From the sequence record PQ464595.1: a stretch of 64,000 bases of DNA, one strand, 5' to 3'. This document shows positions 2,423-63,151 of the stretch, piece after piece. A program made the position numbers and the translations under genes. The notes under the pieces are model-generated. The model worked only from the letters and a program-made list of their open reading frames with translations. It was not told the DNA's origin and did no database searches. Numbering within the stretch: position 1 is the stretch's first letter; each line of letters starts with the position of its first letter.

Positions 2423-2505
2423 GTTGAGTATAATAGGGGTTTCACCTACACTGACGACCAGCATTACCTGTTAAAATCGCTGCTCTATAATTAAGCTATA
2501 TACTC
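2423..2505 (-). ncRNA. tRNA-like RNA with 17-nt expanded anticodon loop and atypical T loop
   Basis: Acceptor GAGTATA/TATACTC, D arm GCTT..GAGC, stem GCGAT/GTCGT, T-like arm with TGAAAC loop. Confidence 0.6.
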
Positions 2506-4249: not shown

Positions 4250-4554
4250 ATTATGCTTTCCCGTTCAGTACTGAACAATACCACTGAAGTAATTCAAGGT
4301 ACGCTTGTTCTTCGTAATTACGTTCTTTGATAGAACGCATCGCTCGCATATCATCAATGATCCATTGTTCCGGTTTCATCTTCATCGTCCTCTATAGGTG
4401 AATCCAAATCAACTTCAACACCAGCAGTGAGTTCTTTAATGTGATTCCACATTTCAGTACTGACTGGTACGAGGTTTTCAGGATGTTCATCAATATCTTT
4501 GGATAAAAAATCCAAGAATTTTTCTTCGGTGCTTTTCATATGTACCTTAAAAGT

Positions 4555-4631: not shown

Positions 4632-5326
4632 ATTGAAAAGGCAATTACTTGCCTTTATTTTCGTCCAATTTCTTGAACATATCCAGAAGTTTATCTGCTT
4701 TTTCATCAACAGTACCTTCTAGATGGATAGTCTTAGCGTTTAGATTCAATAACGCAGCAACTTGTTCAGGATCAACATTATCGAATTCGTCAATAATGAT
4801 AACACCTTTAGGGTCGCCGTGAATTGTTCCACGTTGAATGAAATCATCATCAACATTCATTGACTGCTCAATGAAGTCTTCAAGACCTTTATTCTTTTGT
4901 GGTTCCATCTTTACCATCCTGAGTGAGTGTTTTAACTCGACTTGTTCCTAACTTCTTTCCGCAATCCTTACAGATGCGTTGATATTCAAGTACTGTAAGA
5001 TTCGGTTTATAATGAATTTTACAAACTTCCATACTGACATAATGCCCACAAAATAGCTGTTTGAAAAAGTTCATTATTAATTAAGGCTCAAGTATATCCA
5101 TAATTTCATCTGGATATTCATAGCTACATGCTACGATACCATTGATAACTTCACCATTTTCAGGATCAACTAAGTTACCATTGAATAATTGGAATTCTTC
5201 TTCTGGTTCAGAACCAGAAATATCTTTTACTTCATAACCTGCCATTCTAGCAAGTTGTTCGATTTGTTTACGATTGAGAATCATAACTTTCCTTATTAGG
5301 GGAACCGGAGTTCCCCACGTAGACGA

Positions 5327-9397: not shown

Positions 9398-9907
9398 TCA
9401 TTTCCCCTTAAACACGTCACGTGTTGCGTCGCGTTCGTCGTTTACTACGATGTGTGTCTTTGTAGCCATTACACCCTGAATATAACCTAACCAACGATGT
9501 TTCTTTGTTTCAGACATATCGGGGTTAGACAATTCAGTTAACATCCACGCTAAGTGACTATCAGTAAGTGCTTCATTTGAATTTTCAATTGGAGCACAAT
9601 TTAACAGGTCAAAGTAACGTTGACGCAATTCAGGATAAAAGTCACCATGAATTGGTTTACTTTCTTCCTTTACTTTTTTTAATACATCAATCGCAACCAG
9701 AACTGAATTGGAGTACAAAGAAGTATCTAAACTATCTAATGTACCATTCAAGTACTGTTCAATTACAAATTTAGCACCGCTATGAATCTGTAATTTATCA
9801 CGCTTCAGTAAGTCTATAATGCGTTCTTTATCTCGAATGAGTATATCGAACGCAATTCGTGCTTGAGAAATCTCCGATGAATTCATATTACCCGCCGAAG
9901 CGTTCAT
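9398..9907 (-). CDS. hypothetical protein
   Basis: 169-aa ORF on the coding strand. Confidence 0.7.
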   Translation of the reverse strand: MNASAGNMNSSEISQARIAFDILIRDKERIIDLLKRDKLQIHSGAKFVIEQYLNGTLDSLDTSLYSNSVLVAIDVLKKVKEESKPIHGDFYPELRQRYFDLLNCAPIENSNEALTDSHLAWMLTELSNPDMSETKKHRWLGYIQGVMATKTHIVVNDERDATRDVFKGK

Positions 9908-10235: not shown

Positions 10236-10562
10236 TTATTTGGTCTTAAGTTCTGCTACTACAGCAGCAACTAAGTCCGGTGTAAAATCAATGCCGAAAA
10301 CTTCGGAATAATGTTTTACTGTACCTTCATAACCATGACGCTTGTCATTCAAGCGGTAACGCAATTCAAGAATCGCATTGTCAAAGTTAAACCAAGGATT
10401 GTTTTGACTCGCATGTAAGCGACCCCAATCAGTCAATGGTACGAAACCTTCATCAGCAGACTTACCCCGAAGAATATTATAGATAATATGCTCGTGTACA
10501 GTGTGCTCTTTCTCAAGTTTCCAGGTTGTTGTTACAGTAATGAATTGTTCTTTGGTCAACAT
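10236..10562 (-). CDS. hypothetical protein
   Basis: 108-aa ORF with SD. Confidence 0.7.
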   Translation of the reverse strand: MLTKEQFITVTTTWKLEKEHTVHEHIIYNILRGKSADEGFVPLTDWGRLHASQNNPWFNFDNAILELRYRLNDKRHGYEGTVKHYSEVFGIDFTPDLVAAVVAELKTK

Positions 10563-10682
10563 AGTATGTTCCTTTTGGATAGTAATTAATTTAGTGTTTT
10601 GTTCTGAATTAACTTTATCCGGTGGACCAGTACTGAATTTCTATAGCATCATAGGATTTACCTTTTTGTTTGTTTACTTAAT

Positions 10683-14212: not shown

Positions 14213-14336
14213 TGCGAGAAAGGTTGGACTCGAACCAACGACCAGGCCATTAAAAGTGGATGAAGTATGGTTGCTGAGAAATTACATTACAGTAATTTTT
14301 GGGTTCTACCTGCTCTACCAACTGAGCTACTTTCTC
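14213..14336 (-). tRNA. tRNA-Lys(TTT) interrupted by a 49-nt CAGCAA insert (14260-14308) in the anticodon stem
   Basis: Deleting the insert gives the perfect arm GGCCA-CTTTTAA-TGGCC; acceptor, D and T arms are intact. Confidence 0.75.
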
Positions 14337-22285: not shown

Positions 22286-22404
22286 TGCGGTGAGTACAGG
22301 AATCGAACCTGTGACTTCGGCGTGAAAGGCAATTGTTTGATTGCTGTTAGATTCAGTACTGGAATCCATTTTTTTACGCTATTTTACCACTAAACTAACT
22401 CACC
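22286..22404 (-). tRNA. tRNA-Glu(TTC) interrupted by a 46-nt CAGCAA insert (22331-22376) at 29/30
   Basis: Deleting the insert gives GCGGC-CTTTCAC-GCCGA; acceptor GGTGAGT/ACTCACC, G73. Confidence 0.75.
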
Positions 22405-23441: not shown

Positions 23442-23470
23442 ACTATATCATGCCACGTTAGGGCTGTCAA
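23442..23470 (-). promoter_or_regulatory. sigma70-like promoter upstream of the cREC/tRNA-Glu unit
   Basis: TTGACA-N17-TATAGT. Confidence 0.7.
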
Positions 23471-23627: not shown

Positions 23628-23707
23628 TAGTGCGAGGGGATGGACTTGAACCACCGACACGGAGTTACCCTAAGATAATCTTGCTCTACCATCTGAGCTA
23701 CCCTCGC
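23628..23707 (-). tRNA. tRNA-like gene with aberrant anticodon arm (anticodon not assignable)
   Basis: Perfect acceptor GCGAGGG/CCCTCGC, D and T arms; anticodon/variable region about 5 nt too long with irregular pairing (AGATTATCTTAGGGTAACTCCG). Confidence 0.6.
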
Positions 23708-24244: not shown

Positions 24245-24359
24245 TGTGGAGAGGGGTGGATTCGAACCACCGTACCGTTCTTATGAATGAAATTTATGGA
24301 TGCCGTAAGATTCCATCTGGAATCGCTTTTCGTGTCCTGGGCCGCTAGACGACCTCTCC
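24245..24359 (-). tRNA. tRNA-CAT-like gene interrupted by a 39-nt CAGCAA-family insert (24292-24330; core CGGCAT)
   Basis: Deleting the insert gives CGTTC-ATTCATAA-GAACG (8-nt loop); the insert has a GATTCC AGAT GGAATC stem. Confidence 0.6.
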
Positions 24360-30607: not shown

Positions 30608-30718
30608 GGTGCTAAGAACAGGATTCGAACCTGTAAGGAAACCTCGCGGTACTTCCCACGTCCTATTGTCGCTTTCGCTATCGTCAGACGCTACGTTTAC
30701 CAATTCCGTCATCTCAGC
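30608..30718 (-). ncRNA. class-II tRNA scaffold with a 24-nt expanded anticodon loop
   Basis: GCTGAGA/TCTTAGC, Leu-like D arm, GCGTC/GACGT stem, loop contains GC-GAAA-GC, long variable hairpin, T arm. Confidence 0.7.
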
Positions 30719-30881: not shown

Positions 30882-30956
30882 TGTGGCTCATACCAGATTC
30901 GAACTGGTGTGGACAGAGATTTAGAGTCTCCCGCTACGCCTCTCAGCTAATGAGCC
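30882..30956 (-). tRNA. amber suppressor tRNA (anticodon CTA)
   Basis: Cloverleaf GGCTCAT/ATGAGCC, arm GGAGA-CTCTAAA-TCTCT, A73. Confidence 0.9.
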
Positions 30957-30977: not shown

Positions 30978-31006
30978 ATTATACCAGAGTTTTTTAAGTC
31001 GTTCCA
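30978..31006 (-). promoter_or_regulatory. TGAAACG-class promoter (TGGAACG variant) driving the suppressor tRNA
   Basis: TGGAACG-N16-TATAAT. Confidence 0.7.
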
Positions 31007-33260: not shown

Positions 33261-33827
33261 TTATTTAGGTAAAGAGTTTAAGTACCTCTTACCCGCCTGG
33301 ATAAGTTTCTTCTTCTTGATTTTAAAAGAAGTACTATCCTGTCCACCAAACATTGTACAGTTCGCAAGGATTTCAGCCCATGCAGTTATATACAGAGTAG
33401 GTGCTAAAGGATCAGTCCAGATGGTATCAAAGTCCTCGGACTTAGCCATGTGGAATGTCATATCTTTACGCATCAATTCTGAAATAACTGATTCTTCTGG
33501 AAATAGGTTCATCCATACATCAGCACTAACATTAGCGTGATCAGGGAAGTGAACTTTACCTTCATCATCAACAGTACGACACAATGGTTTACCACAATCA
33601 TGATATTCTTGATAACGCAGTACAATATCATCAGGCAGAATCTTATCTTTAATTTTGCCGTATACTTCAAGCAGTACAGGATCGCCCTATCCAGTGTCAA
33701 GTTCAGAGATCAGTACTTTATACTGTTCTTGAACCATCAGACCATGTGCGTGAACACTAAGCCCTTTCATCTGTTCAGTACTTTGCATTACATGAAGTAG
33801 TTCTTCGAAAGTGTTAGGATAAATCAT
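33261..33827 (-). CDS. HD-domain phosphohydrolase with an in-frame TAG at codon 47 (33687-33689)
   Basis: Manual translation from ATG 33827: ...SVHAHG...ELDTG*GDP...YHDCGKP...HFPDHA; the HD motifs lie on both sides of the stop in one frame. Confidence 0.8.
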
Positions 33828-34162
33828 TTAGCACCTCCGCGAAATAGTTGATATTTCTTAAAGATACTACGCTGTTCAGCAGTTACTGGAGCACTGGCAA
33901 AGGCAGTGAAGCCATAATCCCAATCAGGTTCATGGAACTGGACAAATCCAATACCAGAATCTTTGAGTTCATCAAATGCTTTTTGTAACTTATGTTTATT
34001 CTTACATGAAATAACGATAAGAGAACTAGTCTCAGTACTGTTATTTTCGAAGGCCAAGCCGCTTTCATAAGCTGCGTGGTTTGATTGTACCACAATCTGT
34101 TCTAACGGTAAGTCCGTGCGAACAAATACGTAGATCCAAGTTTTTTCATTCTAGTGAGCCAT
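33824..34162 (-). CDS. PTH2-like peptidyl-tRNA hydrolase with an in-frame TAG at codon 4 (34151-34153)
   Basis: GAGG SD, then ATG GCT CAC TAG AAT...WIYVFVRTDLPLEQIVVQSNHAA; the PTH2 N-terminal strand lies upstream of the GTG start used by the ORF track. Confidence 0.75.
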
Positions 34163-34401
34163 TTTTATTTCCTCTATTTTGGTTTACTTAATTAATTCCC
34201 AATGCCATAAATTCCCACGTATTGGCATGGTTTCACCAGCATCCAGATAGGTTTCCCCATCAAAAATTACTGGTTGTGAAAGTTCGAATCGTTCTTGGTT
34301 AGTTAACATATAACTACCCTCGATTTCTGTACCTAATGGGATTCGAGCACTATCAGAATATACGCATACAAATTTACCCATATATTTCTCCTTAATTAAA
34401 A

Positions 34402-39275: not shown

Positions 39276-39644
39276 TTATGCTAAAATATTTAAAATATTT
39301 TTCACCATCTGAATATGATCAAAGCTTATCAGTGGATCAATAGTACTTAACTGGAAATGCCATTCTTCTGAAATATCCAAATTATGAGTGACGATAATAC
39401 CGCCAATCATGTACTCTATGTTTTTATTTATGAAATCAACATCCAGTACTGGTTTATCATCTACCAGAAAACGATGTAAATCTTTATTTTTATTTGATGC
39501 TACCGTATGAATATAGGTAAACTCAGTTCCTTGATGGAAGTATGAATAAAGAGGGGTTTTCATCATCCCCTCTTTAACAGAGTCTGAGCATTCTAATACA
39601 CGTTCAATAACACTTTCAACTTCAAGTATATCCACTACCAGCAC
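39276..39644 (-). CDS. hypothetical protein, EEWxFQxST paralog family
   Basis: ISEEWHFQLSTI motif. Confidence 0.7.
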   Translation of the reverse strand: MLVVDILEVESVIERVLECSDSVKEGMMKTPLYSYFHQGTEFTYIHTVASNKNKDLHRFLVDDKPVLDVDFINKNIEYMIGGIIVTHNLDISEEWHFQLSTIDPLISFDHIQMVKNILNILA

Positions 39645-40063
39645 CGTAAACGTTTGACCGCCTTAATTTCATCCTTATTAGGATAGATGATTAACCCTGT
39701 TTGAGTTAAACCATCAAAGAAGTTAAAGCCGTAATCCTGAATGTCATGCACAAAGAAACCAGGATGATAATCGTGTGCGTCGATTTCTGCTTGTATCTTA
39801 GCTTTGACCGTATTCATATGGTCTTCATCTTTGATACGCAGAACAATCTTCCTGCGGCCTTCGGTCAACCAACCTTCAAAGTTTGCCACTGGCATGATCA
39901 GGTCTTCATTGTCCTCTGTACGACGACGCTCTTTGAACGTATTGTACTGACCCCATACCTGGTCTAAACCATGACCAACTTGTACTGCGAACTTACCTAA
40001 TGGCATGTTCAGGTCTTCACGAAGAAGAACATAGCACTTATACTGTAGTACTGGCTTTTCCAT
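39635..40063 (-). CDS. peptidyl-tRNA hydrolase, PTH2 family
   Basis: YVLLREDLNMPLGKFAVQVGHG...KIVLR...D.G...T.T.L.I.P. Confidence 0.88.
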   Translation of the reverse strand: MEKPVLQYKCYVLLREDLNMPLGKFAVQVGHGLDQVWGQYNTFKERRRTEDNEDLIMPVANFEGWLTEGRRKIVLRIKDEDHMNTVKAKIQAEIDAHDYHPGFFVHDIQDYGFNFFDGLTQTGLIIYPNKDEIKAVKRLRCW

Positions 40064-57800: not shown

Positions 57801-58818
57801 TTGTTACTTCCTTATAGTTTAGAGAGATAATCAGTTATCTCTTCTTGATATTTTTTGACAGTTTCTTTTAGATCATTATATGCGGCAGTTACAGATTCTT
57901 TACTGTAACCCTGTAAGTTTGAATCATCATTAATTGTAATATAAAGATGACTAAACATATATGAAGTTTGTTCGTTATATACAGAATATTCCATCATTAC
58001 AGTTCCGTCTTCATTAGAAAACCTAATAAAGTTATTACTATGCTTATAGGTCATAGACCAATTAGGCTTCAATGAATTTAGTTCATCTAAAATATTTGTA
58101 ATGAGTTCATCCATTTGGCCTGTATTTTCAACGAATTCGTAACATTCACAGTACTTACAACCTACTGGAGCCATATCTTCATATGAATCAAAATGACGAT
58201 GATACTGATGGCCACATTGACATTCACGTTCATCACCAAAGTTCGGATTATATGATTGTACTTCAATGATACGAGTTATATAAGGTTCATTGCTCATTAT
58301 TGTTCTTCTTCCTTCTGAGCTTTACCCCAATCAAACCCACGCTTGAATTGCTGGTGGAGTTTATCTTCTTTCATTGCTTCAGCACCGCCAATACCAGAAA
58401 TAAATGATAAATGTGGATTATCATATTCTTCATTTTCATAACCACTACGTTTACCTTCGTAAAACGCATTAAGTTCATCTTCACTAAACATTATTAATCT
58501 CCATCATTAGGGTGGAAGAAAAAGTCTTCATCAGCCCTGTCTTTTCCTACGATTGCTTTATGCATCTCGTATTCTTCTAATCGTGCTTCTTCTGCTTCTT
58601 CAGCAGCATAACGTTCTTCTTCTTCGTTCTGAAGCATTTCTTCAATTTCTTCTAAACGATCATTCATTGTTTGTAATTGATCATACAAAGCATCGTAAAA
58701 TCGACGTTCAGTTTTAGACAAATTATCAGGATGAAAATCTTCCTCATACATTTTGTCAATAATATCTTGCATGTCCTTTGAAGTATTCTCAAACATACAA
58801 TATTCCATATTCGGCATA

Positions 58819-59748
58819 TCAGTTATTCCAGTCGTAAAGTCTTTCAGCTAAAGATACAATCCCTTCGGAATTGGTAAGCTTCTGTACCCATTCTTCAGGA
58901 ATAGATTTAATACCATAGAAAGCTCCAGCCAACTGACCAGTAATAGCAGCTACAGTATCTGCGTCATCTCCTAAATTAGCAGCTAACAGTACTGCCTCTT
59001 GGAATGACGATGTTTTTGCGAAGCACCATAAAGCAGCTTCTAATGAGTCAATGACGTATCCAGTACTCTTAATTTCAGAACGTTCTTTCCAGAGATAGTT
59101 TTCAATATCAATGGTACTCTTTACTACATCATTAGTGATACCAAACTTTTCTGGTTCACGAATTTCAAGAATATCAAGTTTATCTGAACCATGAATAGCA
59201 CGGTTAATCATAATAGAAAAAGCAATACATGATTGTACTGGTACTTCATTGGCATGAGTTGTCGTTGAACTCAATGCGGCATAACGAATCAGATCAACGA
59301 AAGCGTCTGAATACATTTCAGGAGTATTATAGAAAATTGGAATAGGAGCTAAACGCATTAGACTTCCATTACCCGCATCCATGAAATGTGTGTTATGTTC
59401 TAAAGTTTTATTCTGTAGGAATCCACGAATAGCAATACGTGTAGTTGCTCCAATATCGAAACATACTCCAGTACTACTCATATATCCATAATTCATCCAG
59501 TTAGCATAACGTGTTAACTGGTCTTCAGAATCAAAACCATAACGAGCTAACAGACTAGTACCTAAGCATAACGCCATACTGGTATCATCAGTCCATTCGC
59601 CAGGTTGTAAATCAAATGGCCCACCACCAACCATATCAGTGATGTGTTCATAGGTATCACGCTCATGGAATTCCAGTACTGTACCTAATGCGTCACCAAC
59701 TGCTAATCCTACTAGAGCACCAATAGCTCTTTCTCGGTTGTCACTCAT
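58819..59748 (-). CDS. ADP-ribosylglycohydrolase (DraG/ARH family)
   Basis: GLAVGDALG, WTDDT, GNGSLMR, TH, GDDADT motifs. Confidence 0.93.
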   Translation of the reverse strand: MSDNRERAIGALVGLAVGDALGTVLEFHERDTYEHITDMVGGGPFDLQPGEWTDDTSMALCLGTSLLARYGFDSEDQLTRYANWMNYGYMSSTGVCFDIGATTRIAIRGFLQNKTLEHNTHFMDAGNGSLMRLAPIPIFYNTPEMYSDAFVDLIRYAALSSTTTHANEVPVQSCIAFSIMINRAIHGSDKLDILEIREPEKFGITNDVVKSTIDIENYLWKERSEIKSTGYVIDSLEAALWCFAKTSSFQEAVLLAANLGDDADTVAAITGQLAGAFYGIKSIPEEWVQKLTNSEGIVSLAERLYDWNN

Positions 59749-60970: not shown

Positions 60971-63151
60971 TTATAGGTCGGTTTTCTCAATGAGCATAAC
61001 GTGACCATTTACAGGTACTTCATAGAATGCGAAGTTTGGTACATGTTCAATGTAATAGTAATAATCATCTAATTCATAATTAGAACGAATTTCATCAGTT
61101 ACTAAAGATAGTGGAATGAAGAAATCACCTTTTCCATCATTTATAATTACTTTTACTAATGAATAGCTGTTGTTGTTTTCAACATCTAGTTTTACACCTT
61201 TCTTTACACCGGAAATACGGGTTTCAGTACGTTCCTTACGGGAAGCATGAGCCGTCAAATCTTCCCAATCAATGATTAGGTTAACTTCGTCTTTTAGTGC
61301 GTTGAAATCTTGTTCCATATCAAGTAGAGCTTTGCGAATCTTAGCAGTACTTTCGCGTACAAAGGTATTGTGCTTCTGAACACGATTCAAGAACTCTTGA
61401 ACAACGTCACGGTCTAGTACTTGATTCAGTTCAGATACGAACTTAGCAGTAATAGCAGGTTGTTCTGGTTTTTCAATCCAACCAGTGTCAAGACTGTTCA
61501 TCATATCGTGGAACTTCTGAATCTTCTCAATAGGAGTATTTGAACCTTCCATGTACTTGATTAGTACTGTAGTCGGTGTGAACAAATCCCATCCAACGAT
61601 ATTGTGAGAAGCAGCATATTCATCAAATGAACCGAAGCTGATTAGAGCTACTTTAAGTTCAATGGTTTCAATTACTGTATCACCAATACTGAATTGAGCA
61701 AGTTCTTCTTCAGATAGTTCTTCATGCCCTTCAGCATCTGGTGCTGTAGCAGTATATGTGTTGTTGTCTGATACTTCGAAATCAACATCAGCTAGACGGA
61801 TCTTAGAACCACCTAAAATAGTTGCTTCACCATCAACTTTCATAACATCTAGTAGTTTTTGCATTTCAGCAATATCACGTTCACGTCCTGTCAACAGTGA
61901 CAAAGTACGTTCTGGTAGTTTGTATGGTTTATCATTAGCAATAGCATCTAAATCTGAAATCAGATTAGCTATGTCTTGAGATGTGCGATCAGTTGGTTGA
62001 CCATCAATGAACTTTAGCCAATCTTCATGACCTGGGTGACGTGGACTACCTGGATGTGTAGGTTCTGACGCACCTTGCACAACAGGGATTTCAGTACCTT
62101 CAAGATCCATACGTAGTGCTTCATCCATAGTTAGGTTCTCACCTAGTACTTCACGAACTGAAATCATTAGTTCTTTTAGAATGTCTTGTTCAGTACGATC
62201 AGATTTCTGAAGTTCAGTTAGGCTTTCTTGAAGATCGAAATCAAATACAAATTCAGCAAGATTCTGATCTTCGATATTATATGTTTCCATAACTGCTTTG
62301 ATAGCTTCTAGGTATTCACCTTCACTAATCTTAATGTTATCAACTAAGAAAACATCATCAGACATGAATCGTGCTACCTCGGCTTCTAGTTCTTCAAATG
62401 CCTGAACAATATCCGCATAGTTTTCATCAGAAAATGCATCAAGTATATTACGCATTTCTTGTACTTCTTTTTCATGACGTGCCGCAGCATCAATTTTAGC
62501 ATTTTTCTCTGCGTCGATAGTCAGTTCACGTACTGCTTTCAGATTATCACGAATTTCCTGAATTTGTTCTTCAGTTAGTTCATCATCTGGTATGATAGTT
62601 TCAGGTTCTTCTGAACGAGAAGTTTGTAGCAGACGGACAGTACCGGTAGCTTGATTATAAGTACTGTAATCAATAACAACGTTACATTGTTTCTCAATGA
62701 GTACTAGACCATTTTCAGTACTGATAGATACTAGACCATCGTAAGTACTAAGTTGACCTAGTTTGAATTCTTTAGTTAAAAGATAATCAATTTGTGGGTC
62801 ACGGTCAAAGATGATTGCCATTGCTGCTAGTGGTTCATCAGATTTTTGTTCAGCAAATGCTTCCTGTACTGAACCTTCAGTGTAAGAAGAATTTTCCTTA
62901 ACAATATCTTCAACGACATTAATTAGGCTGAATTCTTTACCATCAACTTCTAGTTCAAACGTTACTAGACCTTTGGTTGGAATAACTTCAATGTACATGA
63001 TAGCATGTTTTGGAGTTACCGAGTAACGAACGATACTAACATTACCGATAGCTGACTGTAGCTTGTCCTTTAGGACTTGAACAGACGTAATGCCTTCGAT
63101 GTTAACTAGTACTTGAATGACGGATTTAGTATTAATCATATAACACTCCAT
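60971..63151 (-). CDS. large acidic hypothetical protein, possibly late/virion-associated
   Basis: 726 aa, Glu/Asp-rich, coiled-coil segments; TATAAATA 23 nt upstream. Confidence 0.75.
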   Translation of the reverse strand: MECYMINTKSVIQVLVNIEGITSVQVLKDKLQSAIGNVSIVRYSVTPKHAIMYIEVIPTKGLVTFELEVDGKEFSLINVVEDIVKENSSYTEGSVQEAFAEQKSDEPLAAMAIIFDRDPQIDYLLTKEFKLGQLSTYDGLVSISTENGLVLIEKQCNVVIDYSTYNQATGTVRLLQTSRSEEPETIIPDDELTEEQIQEIRDNLKAVRELTIDAEKNAKIDAAARHEKEVQEMRNILDAFSDENYADIVQAFEELEAEVARFMSDDVFLVDNIKISEGEYLEAIKAVMETYNIEDQNLAEFVFDFDLQESLTELQKSDRTEQDILKELMISVREVLGENLTMDEALRMDLEGTEIPVVQGASEPTHPGSPRHPGHEDWLKFIDGQPTDRTSQDIANLISDLDAIANDKPYKLPERTLSLLTGRERDIAEMQKLLDVMKVDGEATILGGSKIRLADVDFEVSDNNTYTATAPDAEGHEELSEEELAQFSIGDTVIETIELKVALISFGSFDEYAASHNIVGWDLFTPTTVLIKYMEGSNTPIEKIQKFHDMMNSLDTGWIEKPEQPAITAKFVSELNQVLDRDVVQEFLNRVQKHNTFVRESTAKIRKALLDMEQDFNALKDEVNLIIDWEDLTAHASRKERTETRISGVKKGVKLDVENNNSYSLVKVIINDGKGDFFIPLSLVTDEIRSNYELDDYYYYIEHVPNFAFYEVPVNGHVMLIEKTDL

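What the first reader, a model, noticed from the sequence alone, without database searches (positions are those of the whole stretch)
30882..30956. Amber suppressor tRNA with its own promoter in a genome that still uses TAG as a stop
Seen: a CUA anticodon in a well-formed tRNA. TAG terminates some genes (e.g. 39635-39637), yet two nearby genes have in-frame TAG. Inference: partial, timed readthrough as a regulatory switch rather than full recoding.
Basis: partly seen in the sequence, partly recalled or inferred. Interest (0 to 1): 0.75.

Follow-up and report, generated by a model that had tools for sequence, protein, structure and literature searches.

The report
Suppressor tRNA licensing amber-gated phage genes
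A jumbo phage that otherwise uses the normal genetic code carries an amber-suppressor tRNA and three genes that each need a conserved in-frame TAG read through; two of them, tRNA-directed hydrolases, recur next to such tRNAs in many unrelated phages, which suggests why standard-code phages keep "orphan" suppressor tRNAs.

Summary
The window is Erwinia jumbo phage Kaldavass (PQ464595.1, record 62001-126000). The tRNA(CUA) at 30883-30956 (minus strand) is real: ARAGORN calls it, Rfam scores it 53.7 bits, 12 of 19 pairs covary among relatives, and the anticodon loop is invariant. GenBank already notes it as a suppressor. The genome is not recoded: TAG ends 26 of 542 ORFs. Three genes carry a conserved in-frame TAG. 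One is a PTH2-type peptidyl-tRNA hydrolase (33824-34162, TAG at codon 4). The second, overlapping it, is an HD phosphohydrolase (33261-33827, TAG at codon 47) whose fold is closest to the HD domain of CCA-adding enzymes. The third has unknown function (10236-10652, TAG at codon 4). All three are mis-annotated as fragments. The TAGs persist in nine lineages despite near-saturated synonymous change, and dN/dS is 0.03-0.16 on both sides of the HD TAG. In 72 distinct HD homologues from viral contigs, 50 have an in-frame TAG, mostly SD-ATG-(1-6 codons)-TAG. 49 of 71 have a CUA tRNA within 10 kb, always on the same strand. The amino acid inserted and the logic of the circuit remain inferred.

The parts
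30883..30956 (-). Amber suppressor tRNA, anticodon CUA, class I, discriminator A73, no encoded CCA
   Evidence: ARAGORN; Rfam RF00005 53.7 bits; 12 of 19 pairs covary among 6 phages and the anticodon loop CTCTAAA is invariant; identical copy in XbC2
30978..30986 (-). Extended -10 promoter-like motif TGGTATAAT, 21 nt upstream of the tRNA
   Evidence: Conserved in 5 of 6 relatives, with a TTGAAA -35-like hexamer in GAP32 and Yen9-04; motif enriched 15 vs 4.9 expected. Function is inferred.
33824..34162 (-). PTH2-like peptidyl-tRNA hydrolase gene, 112 codons, amber-gated: SD AGAGGA (34170-34175), ATG 34160-34162, in-frame TAG at codon 4 (34151-34153). Its stop overlaps the HD start (ATGA). GenBank CDS0237 starts at an internal GTG (34093).
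   Evidence: TAG and leader conserved in 9 lineages with variable leader codons; BLASTP to the XacN1 PTH2 domain 41% identity, E 4e-25; family profile vs PDB 2ZV3 E 2e-7; Pfam PTH2 in 10 of 14 family members, window member alone E 0.013
33261..33827 (-). HD-domain phosphohydrolase gene, 188 codons, in-frame TAG at codon 47 (33687-33689). GenBank splits it into CDS0236, CDS0234 and a spurious CDS0235.
   Evidence: TAG invariant in 9 lineages while only 19% of 4-fold sites are invariant, and dN/dS is 0.03-0.16 in all segments; both pieces hit phrog_14850 colinearly; invariant H-G before and HDCGK, H, D, H after the TAG; single-domain model pLDDT 93.9; closest folds are the HD domains of CC-/A-adding tRNA nucleotidyltransferases
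10236..10652 (-). Third amber-gated gene, unknown function: ATG ATG CTA TAG (TAG 10641-10643), then 134 codons. Lies just downstream of tRNA-Gly. GenBank starts it at the internal ATG 10562.
   Evidence: scan; relatives align from residues 1-3 after the TAG; leader and TAG conserved in GAP32, CBB and Yen9-04; no Pfam hit
39635..40063 (-). Context: canonical PTH2 paralogue that ends in TAG (39635-39637, followed by T), with a second in-frame TAG 13 codons later
   Evidence: Pfam PTH2 E 1.6e-11

Best explanation
The gene at 30883-30956 is a functional amber-suppressor tRNA of a standard-code jumbo phage. Its demonstrable clients are a small fixed set of phage genes that begin with, or contain, a conserved UAG: a PTH2-type peptidyl-tRNA hydrolase (UAG at codon 4), the overlapping HD phosphohydrolase (UAG at codon 47) and one gene of unknown function (UAG at codon 4). 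Ribosomes start at a normal SD-ATG and meet the UAG. They make the full protein only if the charged tRNA(CUA) outcompetes release factor 1. The output of these genes is therefore tied to the activity of the phage's own suppressor, an 'amber gate'. The same arrangement (a PTH2-like gene and/or an HD gene, each with an early in-frame TAG, and a CUA tRNA about 1 kb away on the same strand) recurs in many unrelated phages, so it is a conserved module. Both gated enzymes resemble enzymes that act on tRNA 3' ends: PTH2 cleaves the peptidyl-tRNA ester, and the HD fold is closest to the end-healing domain of CCA-adding enzymes. I therefore infer a self-sensing loop in which the amount of tRNA-end hydrolases made tracks the level of suppression. 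Their role could be to clear the by-products of read-through (peptidyl-tRNA from ribosomes that run past natural TAG stops) or to tune the suppressor itself. Shown here: the tRNA structure and its conservation, the conserved in-frame TAGs, purifying selection on both sides of the HD TAG, the family-wide linkage and the read-through-type context. Inferred: that this tRNA is the decoder, which amino acid it inserts, the enzymes' substrates, and the sign and purpose of the loop.
For: tRNA: (12 of 19 pairs compensatory, anticodon loop invariant while the body diverges to 66-71% identity). Standard code: 415 TAA, 101 TGA, 26 TAG terminators. HD gene: TAG at codon 47 in 6 isolates and 3 metagenomic lineages; dN/dS 0.03-0.16 before the TAG, between the TAG and the first ATG, and after it; 19% of 4-fold sites invariant, so about 0.007 chance of an unchanged TAG if it were free to drift; catalytic-type residues on both sides; one compact domain, with the TAG position in an inter-helix loop. 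PTH2-like gene: SD-ATG-2 codons-TAG in 9 lineages with varying leader codons and no start codon for 19 codons after the TAG. Third gene. Genome scans with TAA and TGA as controls find only these TAG sites. Family level: TAG is the first in-frame stop upstream of the invariant H-G in 43 of 72 HD genes (TAA 14, TGA 15), clustered 19-30 codons before it, behind SD-ATG leaders. 50 of 72 have an in-frame TAG at five or more different positions. A CUA tRNA lies within 10 kb in 49 of 71, median distance 1.1 kb, same strand 61:0, and CUA is the commonest of 534 anticodons; 11 of 14 loci with only 1-3 tRNAs have one. The PTH2-like neighbour is present in 38 loci, 33 with an early TAG. The loci are not globally recoded. 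Gate TAGs are followed by A 57, G 23, C 6, T 0, against 31% T after terminator TAGs. Hidden gates exist in XacN1 and RsoM2USA, whose authors reported suppressors without targets (PMC5852040, PMC8504454). Function hints: HD fold; the phage's CCA enzyme lacks an HD domain; HD-PTH2 fusions in XacN1 and pT24; PTH2 profile.
Against: There are no expression, charging or proteomic data, so decoding of these UAGs by this tRNA is inferred from co-occurrence. Within the HD family, presence of a TAG in the gene and presence of a nearby CUA tRNA are not correlated with each other (33/17 vs 17/5, p 0.41). 17 loci have the tRNA but no TAG in HD, so the tRNA is not merely a licence for HD. 17 loci have a TAG but no CUA tRNA within 10 kb; most of these have no tRNAs at all in the stretch, so the tRNA may lie elsewhere, and this was not checked. 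I ran no baseline for how often CUA tRNAs occur near unrelated phage genes. The loci are phylogenetically related, so the Fisher tests overstate significance. The BF/CBB/Yen9-04 suppressors have two acceptor-stem mismatches. The HD assignment rests on fold similarity of TM about 0.6 and sub-threshold Pfam hits. No excess of backup stops follows TAG-terminated genes. The amino-acid identity of the tRNA is unresolved.
Confidence: 0.7

Rival explanations
1. One reading: the suppressor drives partial, timed read-through as a global switch, as proposed for TAG-recoded gut phages where late and lysis genes are gated.
For: The genome is standard-code, low in GC and depleted in TAG, and it carries a suppressor. 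That matches the precursor state in the Borges et al. model. The tRNA has its own promoter-like site.
Against: Only three amber genes were found in 366 kb, none structural or lytic, and all lie in the early-looking tRNA region on the same strand as the tRNA. The promoter type is shared with ordinary tRNAs. The state is stable across two genera and is not an intermediate accumulating more TAGs.
Confidence: 0.12
2. The UAGs are passed or used without this tRNA. The 2-6-codon leaders would act as minigenes (as with lambda bar minigenes and Pth; my own knowledge), where termination or peptidyl-tRNA drop-off at the UAG is itself the signal. Downstream translation would come from near-cognate host tRNAs or re-initiation, and the CUA tRNA would have another main role, such as perturbing host termination, acting as a decoy against tRNA-targeting defences, or rescuing nonsense mutants.
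For: The leaders are minigene-sized and sit in front of a peptidyl-tRNA hydrolase gene. 17 loci have a CUA tRNA next to an HD gene without a TAG. RsoM2USA, XacN1 and others keep suppressors although very few genes need them.
Against: No ATG, GTG or TTG follows the TAG for 19-58 codons in the three Kaldavass genes, so re-initiation is unlikely. The HD TAG is at codon 47, inside the domain, so it is not a minigene. The tight same-strand linkage with CUA tRNAs specifically (61 of 534 tRNAs) and the purine at +4 fit tRNA-mediated suppression.
Confidence: 0.1
3. The in-frame TAGs are ordinary stops or decaying genes: the annotated fragments are the real products or pseudogenes, and the suppressor is a by-product of tRNA-array turnover.
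For: All public annotations treat them as separate short CDSs. One relative (CBB) has lost the promoter motif and has a mismatched T stem.
Against: Strong purifying selection acts on the unannotated stretches (dN/dS 0.04-0.16 between the HD TAG and the first ATG). The TAG is invariant where neutral sites are near saturation. Catalytic motifs are split across the TAG. The tRNA shows covariation. The pattern recurs across unrelated phages at different positions.
Confidence: 0.04

Closest known systems
Stop-codon-recoded (code 15, TAG to Gln) phages with suppressor tRNAs: crAss-like, Lak and others (Borges et al., bioRxiv 10.1101/2021.08.26.457843; PMC9523058)
   Same: A phage-encoded CUA tRNA reads in-frame TAG in a host with the standard code; low GC and TAG-poor genome; read-through proposed to be regulatory.
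   Different: Here TAG remains a terminator (26 ORFs). Only three genes are affected. They are tRNA-related or early-region genes, not lysis or structural genes. The state is stable across genera. The gate is typically 2-7 codons after the start.
prfB (RF2) autoregulation by an in-frame UGA in E. coli (my own knowledge)
   Same: An early in-frame stop codon in a translation-factor gene makes its synthesis depend on how efficiently that stop is read, which closes a loop.
   Different: RF2 uses a +1 frameshift, not a suppressor tRNA, and its feedback is proven. Here the link between the gated enzymes and suppression is inferred from fold and family only.
Synthetic suppressor-tRNA feed-forward 'leak dampener' (PMC7969014)
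   Same: A gene carrying amber codons is expressed only when a co-regulated suppressor tRNA is present.
   Different: That system is engineered; this would be a natural, widespread counterpart with specific client genes.
Theta-ribozyme-associated suppressor tRNAs of gut phages (PMC10879173)
   Same: Suppressor tRNAs that mostly lack an encoded CCA, in phages enriched for CCA-adding enzyme and other tRNA-end enzymes.
   Different: No ribozyme was found here: no Rfam hit and no conserved 3' flank among 59 CUA tRNAs. That paper does not mention HD or PTH2 partners or amber-gated genes.
Classical suppressors (supE, supF, T4 psu1) and 'tRNA-Pyl' labels
   Same: CUA anticodon, and an A36-A37-A38 loop as in tRNAs that decode UNN codons.
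   Different: This tRNA is not a laboratory mutant of a sense tRNA but a conserved gene. It is not pyrrolysine tRNA: it has a canonical D loop with GG, a TPsiC loop and a 5-bp anticodon stem. 'Pyl' is the software's default name for CUA.

Membership tests
tRNA (Rfam RF00005) | Cloverleaf that scores above the family threshold | tested here: met
   53.7 bits against a gathering score of 29; ARAGORN call
tRNA (Rfam RF00005) | Helices maintained by compensatory change among homologues | tested here: met
   12 of 19 pairs have changes on both sides in 6 phages
Functional amber suppressor tRNA | Anticodon CUA in a 7-nt loop with U33 and a purine at position 37 | tested here: met
   Loop CUCUAAA is invariant in 6 phages and near-universal in 59 CUA tRNAs
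Functional amber suppressor tRNA | Expressed, CCA-tailed, aminoacylated, and decodes UAG in vivo | not testable with these tools
   CCA is not encoded; the phage has a CCA-adding enzyme; no expression data
Pyrrolysine tRNA (the label given by ARAGORN and several GenBank records) | Atypical tRNA-Pyl architecture (6-bp anticodon stem, small D loop without GG, 3-nt variable loop) together with pylS/pylBCD genes (features from my own knowledge) | tested here: not met
   The Rfam alignment shows a canonical D loop with GG, a 5-bp anticodon stem, GUUCGAAU T loop and a 6-nt variable region. No Pyl gene appears in the record's annotation tables.
Code-15 (TAG-recoded) phages | TAG abandoned as a terminator, with in-frame TAG in many genes | tested here: not met
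   26 of 542 ORFs end in TAG; three amber genes in 366 kb; relatives' loci show 0-2 read-through-like TAGs per 20 kb
HD-domain metal-dependent phosphohydrolases | H...HD...D/H metal-binding motif set | tested here: met
   Invariant H36, H84-D85, H105, D130 and H134 in 43 sequences
HD-domain metal-dependent phosphohydrolases | Match to the Pfam HD model above threshold, or a clear fold match | tested here: inconclusive
   Pfam HD E 0.016-0.05, below the cut-off, and only in distant homologues. Foldseek best hits are the HD domains of Aquifex, Deinococcus and Thermus tRNA nucleotidyltransferases, TM 0.56-0.61, E 5e-4 to 1e-3, then YfbR, PhnZ, OxsA and GlnD.
PTH2 peptidyl-tRNA hydrolase (PF01981) | Sequence match to the family | tested here: met
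   Family profile against PDB 2ZV3 E 2e-7 over the full length, also 1RLK, 1WN2 and 1RZW. 10 of 14 members hit PF01981, best E 1e-8. The window's own protein alone is sub-threshold (16.2 bits against 23) but is 41% identical to the XacN1 domain that passes.
PTH2 peptidyl-tRNA hydrolase (PF01981) | Hydrolysis of peptidyl-tRNA | not testable with these tools
   No assay was possible
Autoregulatory recoding (prfB-like) | The gene product alters decoding of the stop codon that gates its own synthesis | not testable with these tools
   Suggested only by the tRNA-related nature of the gated enzymes

The most novel reading that the evidence does not exclude
A widespread, so far undescribed three-part phage module: an amber-suppressor tRNA plus a PTH2-type peptidyl-tRNA hydrolase and a CCA-enzyme-type HD phosphohydrolase, whose own translation is gated by a UAG placed a few codons after the start. 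It would form a self-sensing circuit that measures suppressor activity and sets the level of tRNA-end hydrolases accordingly. This would explain the 'orphan' suppressor tRNAs of standard-code jumbo phages (XacN1, RsoM2USA, ME3, and the GAP32/CBB/BF group). It could also be the core from which full TAG recoding evolves.
Probability: 0.5. Interest if true: 0.88.

Novelty: new variant of a known kind. Interest (0 to 1): 0.8.

Why it matters
Suppressor tRNAs have been reported in many standard-code jumbo phages without any known target. The XacN1 authors searched explicitly and found none (PMC5852040). Others list them as 'tRNA-Pyl' or guess at many targets (PMC7760394, PMC8504454). This analysis names specific, conserved client genes and shows why they were missed: leaders of 2-6 codons, fragments annotated as separate CDSs, and database proteins with an artefactual Gln. 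It also shows that the same gene pair travels with CUA tRNAs across unrelated phages. That turns the open question of what these tRNAs are for into experiments that can be done with cultured phage-host pairs (Kaldavass/Erwinia aphidicola, GAP32/Cronobacter, CBB/Pectobacterium, BF/Serratia, ME3/Acinetobacter). It has three further uses. It gives a natural example of suppressor-gated gene expression. It suggests a minimal starting point for the evolution of stop-codon recoding. It also flags a systematic annotation error, since three genes per genome in this clade are mis-called.

Tried and rejected
(a) The whole-window Rfam gathering scan missed the tRNA. This was a filter effect; the local scan gives 53.7 bits.

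(b) Gln at HD position 47 in database proteins P0001, P0002 and P0004 looked like a clue to the inserted amino acid. The DNA has TAG, so this is a gene-caller artefact. Real uninterrupted homologues have I, V, T, K, S or F there.

(c) tRNA identity. The window holds no close paralogue and E. coli has no blastn match. A Leu-like T arm (23 of 26) occurs only in the BF/Yen type and looks like a conversion patch. Discriminator bases vary among 59 CUA tRNAs. Identity is unresolved.

(d) A theta/HDV-like ribozyme 3' of the tRNA, which could have given the HD enzyme a substrate. There is no Rfam hit and no conserved 3' flank, and the paper does not mention HD.

(e) Other TAG candidates. 4948-4950 and 4392-4394 have upstream pieces that do not look coding and the coding-score scans did not flag them. 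23443-23445 fails because relatives align only from the annotated ATG.

(f) Backup stops after TAG-terminated genes show no clear excess.

(g) The ORF-length ratio test for recoding was uninformative and was replaced by the coding-score test.

(h) My first N-terminal-gate scan returned nothing because the thresholds were too strict; corrected.

(i) TAG in HD and proximity of a CUA tRNA are not associated within the family (p 0.41).

(j) The simple promoter scan did not call the tRNA promoter and found no enrichment of two-hexamer sites.

Full report
**Identity of the window.** The window is identical to Erwinia phage Kaldavass (PQ464595.1, 366,556 bp; window position 1 is record position 62001). 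Kaldavass is a jumbo myovirus of the GAP32/CBB/XbC2 group, genus Mimasvirus, with Eneladusvirus as the sister genus (PMC11780129). The window carries 26 ARAGORN tRNAs, all on the minus strand, among small early-region genes.

**The observation.** A 74-nt tRNA with anticodon CUA lies at 30883-30956 on the minus strand. Rfam's tRNA model scores it at 53.7 bits in a local scan. The whole-window scan missed it through its speed filters. It has a regular cloverleaf, the loop CUCUAAA, discriminator A and no encoded CCA, like most tRNAs of this phage. GenBank already notes 'suppressor tRNA', and relatives label theirs Sup, Pyl or OTHER. Six phages carry a CUA tRNA at the syntenic place. Their bodies have diverged to 66-71% identity, yet 12 of 19 base pairs are kept by compensatory changes and the anticodon loop is invariant. 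This is a tRNA under selection for reading UAG. It is not tRNA-Pyl, because it has a canonical D loop, T loop and 5-bp anticodon stem. An extended -10 motif, TGGTATAAT, lies 21 nt upstream and is conserved in 5 of 6 phages. The motif is enriched in the window (15 found, 4.9 expected) and also precedes tRNA-Pro, Asn, Leu and Ser. So 'its own promoter' is plausible but not special.

**The genome is not recoded.** I reassembled the phage genome from the public record. Among 542 non-overlapping ORFs, 415 end in TAA, 101 in TGA and 26 in TAG.

**Amber gene 1, the HD gene.** The frame at 33261-33827 (minus strand) reads 46 codons, TAG (33687-33689), then 141 codons, with no ATG for 58 codons after the TAG. 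The same TAG sits at codon 47 in Kaldavass, XbC2, GAP32, CBB, BF and fHe-Yen9-04 and in three metagenomic lineages, with differing flanking codons. dN/dS is 0.03-0.16 before the TAG, between the TAG and the first ATG, and after it, while dS is 0.6-2.7. Only 19% of four-fold sites are invariant across these lineages, so an unconstrained TAG would survive with a probability of roughly 0.007. Homologues outside the clade are uninterrupted, with I, V, T, K, S or F at that position. Both pieces hit one PHROG family colinearly, and a second PHROG family consists of the 46-residue fragments. The family has invariant H-G before the TAG and HDCGK, H, D and H after it. A confident model (pLDDT 93.9) shows one helical domain with the TAG position in a loop. 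The best structural matches are the HD domains of the Aquifex, Deinococcus and Thermus CC-/A-adding tRNA nucleotidyltransferases (TM about 0.6, E 5e-4 to 1e-3), followed by generic HD hydrolases. A profile search points weakly to the same entries. The phage's own tRNA nucleotidyltransferase lacks an HD domain.

**Amber gene 2, the PTH2-like gene.** Directly upstream, and overlapping the HD start by ATGA, the sequence reads AGAGGA-N7-ATG GCT CAC TAG AAT GAA AAA ACT TGG..., with the TAG at 34151-34153. All nine lineages keep SD, ATG, two variable codons and TAG. The next possible start codon is 20 codons downstream. That is where GenBank starts the CDS, which cuts off a conserved strand. The protein is 41% identical (E 4e-25) to the PTH2 domain fused to HD in XacN1. 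The family profile matches archaeal-type PTH2 structures (2ZV3, E 2e-7), and 10 of 14 members hit Pfam PTH2. My first genome scans required at least 15 open codons before a stop and could not see this gate.

**Amber gene 3.** A scan for ATG-(1-8 codons)-stop-long coding ORF, with TAA and TGA as controls, recovers the PTH2-like gate and one more site: ATG ATG CTA TAG, with the TAG at 10641-10643, followed by 134 codons. Relatives align from the first residues after the TAG, and GAP32, CBB and Yen9-04 keep the same leader and TAG. Its function is unknown. A further candidate at 23443 was rejected.

**The pattern is general.** I searched the viral-contig collection with the HD family alone and obtained 80 loci with 10-kb flanks, containing 72 distinct HD proteins (71 by DNA identity) at 35-60% identity to the query.
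- A CUA tRNA lies within 10 kb in 49 of 71, at a median distance of 1.1 kb.
- All 61 such tRNAs are on the HD strand.
- CUA is the commonest of 534 anticodons in these loci.
- 11 of 14 loci with only 1-3 tRNAs include one.
- The first in-frame stop upstream of the invariant H-G is TAG in 43 of 72 (TAA 14, TGA 15). These TAGs cluster 19-30 codons upstream, sit behind SD-ATG-(1-6 codons) leaders, and have no start codon after them.
- Counting internal TAGs at four or more other positions, 50 of 72 HD genes carry an amber codon, and 67 of 72 have an amber codon and/or a nearby CUA tRNA.
- A PTH2-like gene abuts HD in 38 loci, and 33 of those have a TAG at codons 2-6.
- The loci are not globally recoded.
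- The 86 gate TAGs are followed by A (57), G (23), C (6) and never T. 31% of 278 terminator TAGs in the same loci are followed by T. From my own knowledge of E. coli, a 3' purine favours amber suppression and a 3' U favours termination.
- XacN1 and RsoM2USA, whose authors reported suppressors without identifiable targets (PMC5852040, PMC8504454), have unannotated gates (ATG AAG TAG; ATG AAA TCG TAG) just upstream of their annotated HD starts.

**Interpretation.** The shown facts support a dedicated arrangement. A standard-code phage keeps a UAG-reading tRNA together with a few genes whose translation requires UAG to be read. The amber codon is selected for, is usually placed right after the start, and sits in a context suited to read-through. 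That the window's tRNA is the decoder is an inference from co-conservation. The clients' nature (a peptidyl-tRNA hydrolase and an HD domain of the kind that heals tRNA 3' ends in CCA-adding enzymes) suggests a loop between suppressor activity and tRNA-end metabolism. Such a loop could compensate for peptidyl-tRNA and stalled ribosomes produced by read-through of natural TAG stops, could tune the suppressor, or could give positive feedback on its maturation. I cannot decide the sign or purpose of the loop.

**Caveats.**
- There are no experimental data.
- I ran no baseline for the frequency of CUA tRNAs near unrelated genes.
- The loci are phylogenetically non-independent.
- 17 loci have the tRNA but no TAG in HD, and 17 have a TAG but no tRNA within 10 kb.
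- The BF-type suppressors have acceptor-stem mismatches.
- The HD assignment is moderate in strength.
- The inserted amino acid is unknown; the 'Q' in database proteins is an artefact.

**Novelty.** Phage suppressor tRNAs and TAG recoding are known. I found no paper in the library that links HD or PTH2 genes with suppressor tRNAs or that describes these amber-gated genes. The tRNA alone is already annotated. The client genes and the conserved module appear to be new, so I class the finding as a new variant of programmed stop-codon read-through by phage suppressor tRNAs.

Noticed in passing
window 30610-30718 (-): A 109-nt tRNA-like element (Rfam tRNA 38.4 bits) directly downstream of the suppressor. 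It has about 17 extra nucleotides in the anticodon arm and a long variable arm. GenBank calls it tRNA-Arg, and two dubious short CDSs are annotated over it. XbC2 lacks it at this place.
   Followed up: partly
window 22288-22404, 14215-14336, 2425-2505 (-); GenBank also lists 24247-24359: Further long (81-122 nt) tRNA-like Rfam hits that ARAGORN does not call. GenBank lists two of them as tRNA-OTHER. They could be intron-containing or degenerate tRNAs.
   Followed up: no
window 23630-23707 (-): ARAGORN models this tRNA with an 8-nt anticodon loop and a four-base anticodon (ttag). GenBank calls it tRNA-Lys. Rfam gives 45 bits, with extra bases in the anticodon arm.
   Followed up: partly
all tRNAs of the window: Most do not encode CCA, and the discriminator is followed by C(A/T)AA. 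The phage encodes a CCA-adding enzyme without an HD domain, a Thg1-like enzyme, TyrRS, RNA ligases, PNK, a YqeY-like protein and a methyltransferase (record 58314-58853, 272039-274324, 297191-297940, 315533-316801).
   Followed up: partly
L004:8517-8589, L005:8108-8183, L006:7934-8006: The CBB, BF and Yen9-04 suppressors have two adjacent acceptor-stem mismatches (4:69, 5:68). Their T arm is 23 of 26 identical to the phage's tRNA-Leu(UAG), which looks like a gene-conversion patch. In GAP32 the suppressor sits 3 nt from tRNA-Leu(UAA).
   Followed up: partly
P0001, P0002, P0004; L019-L023; phrog_26054; GenBank CDS0234-0237 and CDS at record 72239-72562: Public resources mis-handle these genes. 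Some metagenome gene calls read TAG as Gln (a code-15 model applied to short contigs). One PHROG family is made only of the 46-aa HD fragments. Isolate annotations split or truncate all three amber genes.
   Followed up: yes
window 39635-40063 (-): A second, canonical PTH2 gene ends in TAG followed by T, and has another in-frame TAG 13 codons later. So the phage has one PTH2 copy terminated by TAG and one gated by TAG.
   Followed up: partly
L010:~615-640 (XacN1), L009:~600-625 (RsoM2USA), L050 (ME3), L007 (Arash): XacN1 and RsoM2USA have unannotated amber gates before their HD genes. ME3 has the gate in its PTH2-like gene, with a CUA tRNA 0.75 kb away. Arash's 50-aa 'peptidyl-tRNA hydrolase' next to HD looks like a truncated call of the same family.
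   Followed up: partly
L046, L055, L062 at locus position 9685; L070, L103, L113: A few other read-through-like TAGs lie in genes neighbouring the HD gene in distant loci. They may be additional client genes.
   Followed up: no
Kaldavass record 182603-184943 (L015): The large terminase is annotated as two adjacent CDSs in different frames. This could be an intron, a frameshift or an annotation problem.
   Followed up: no
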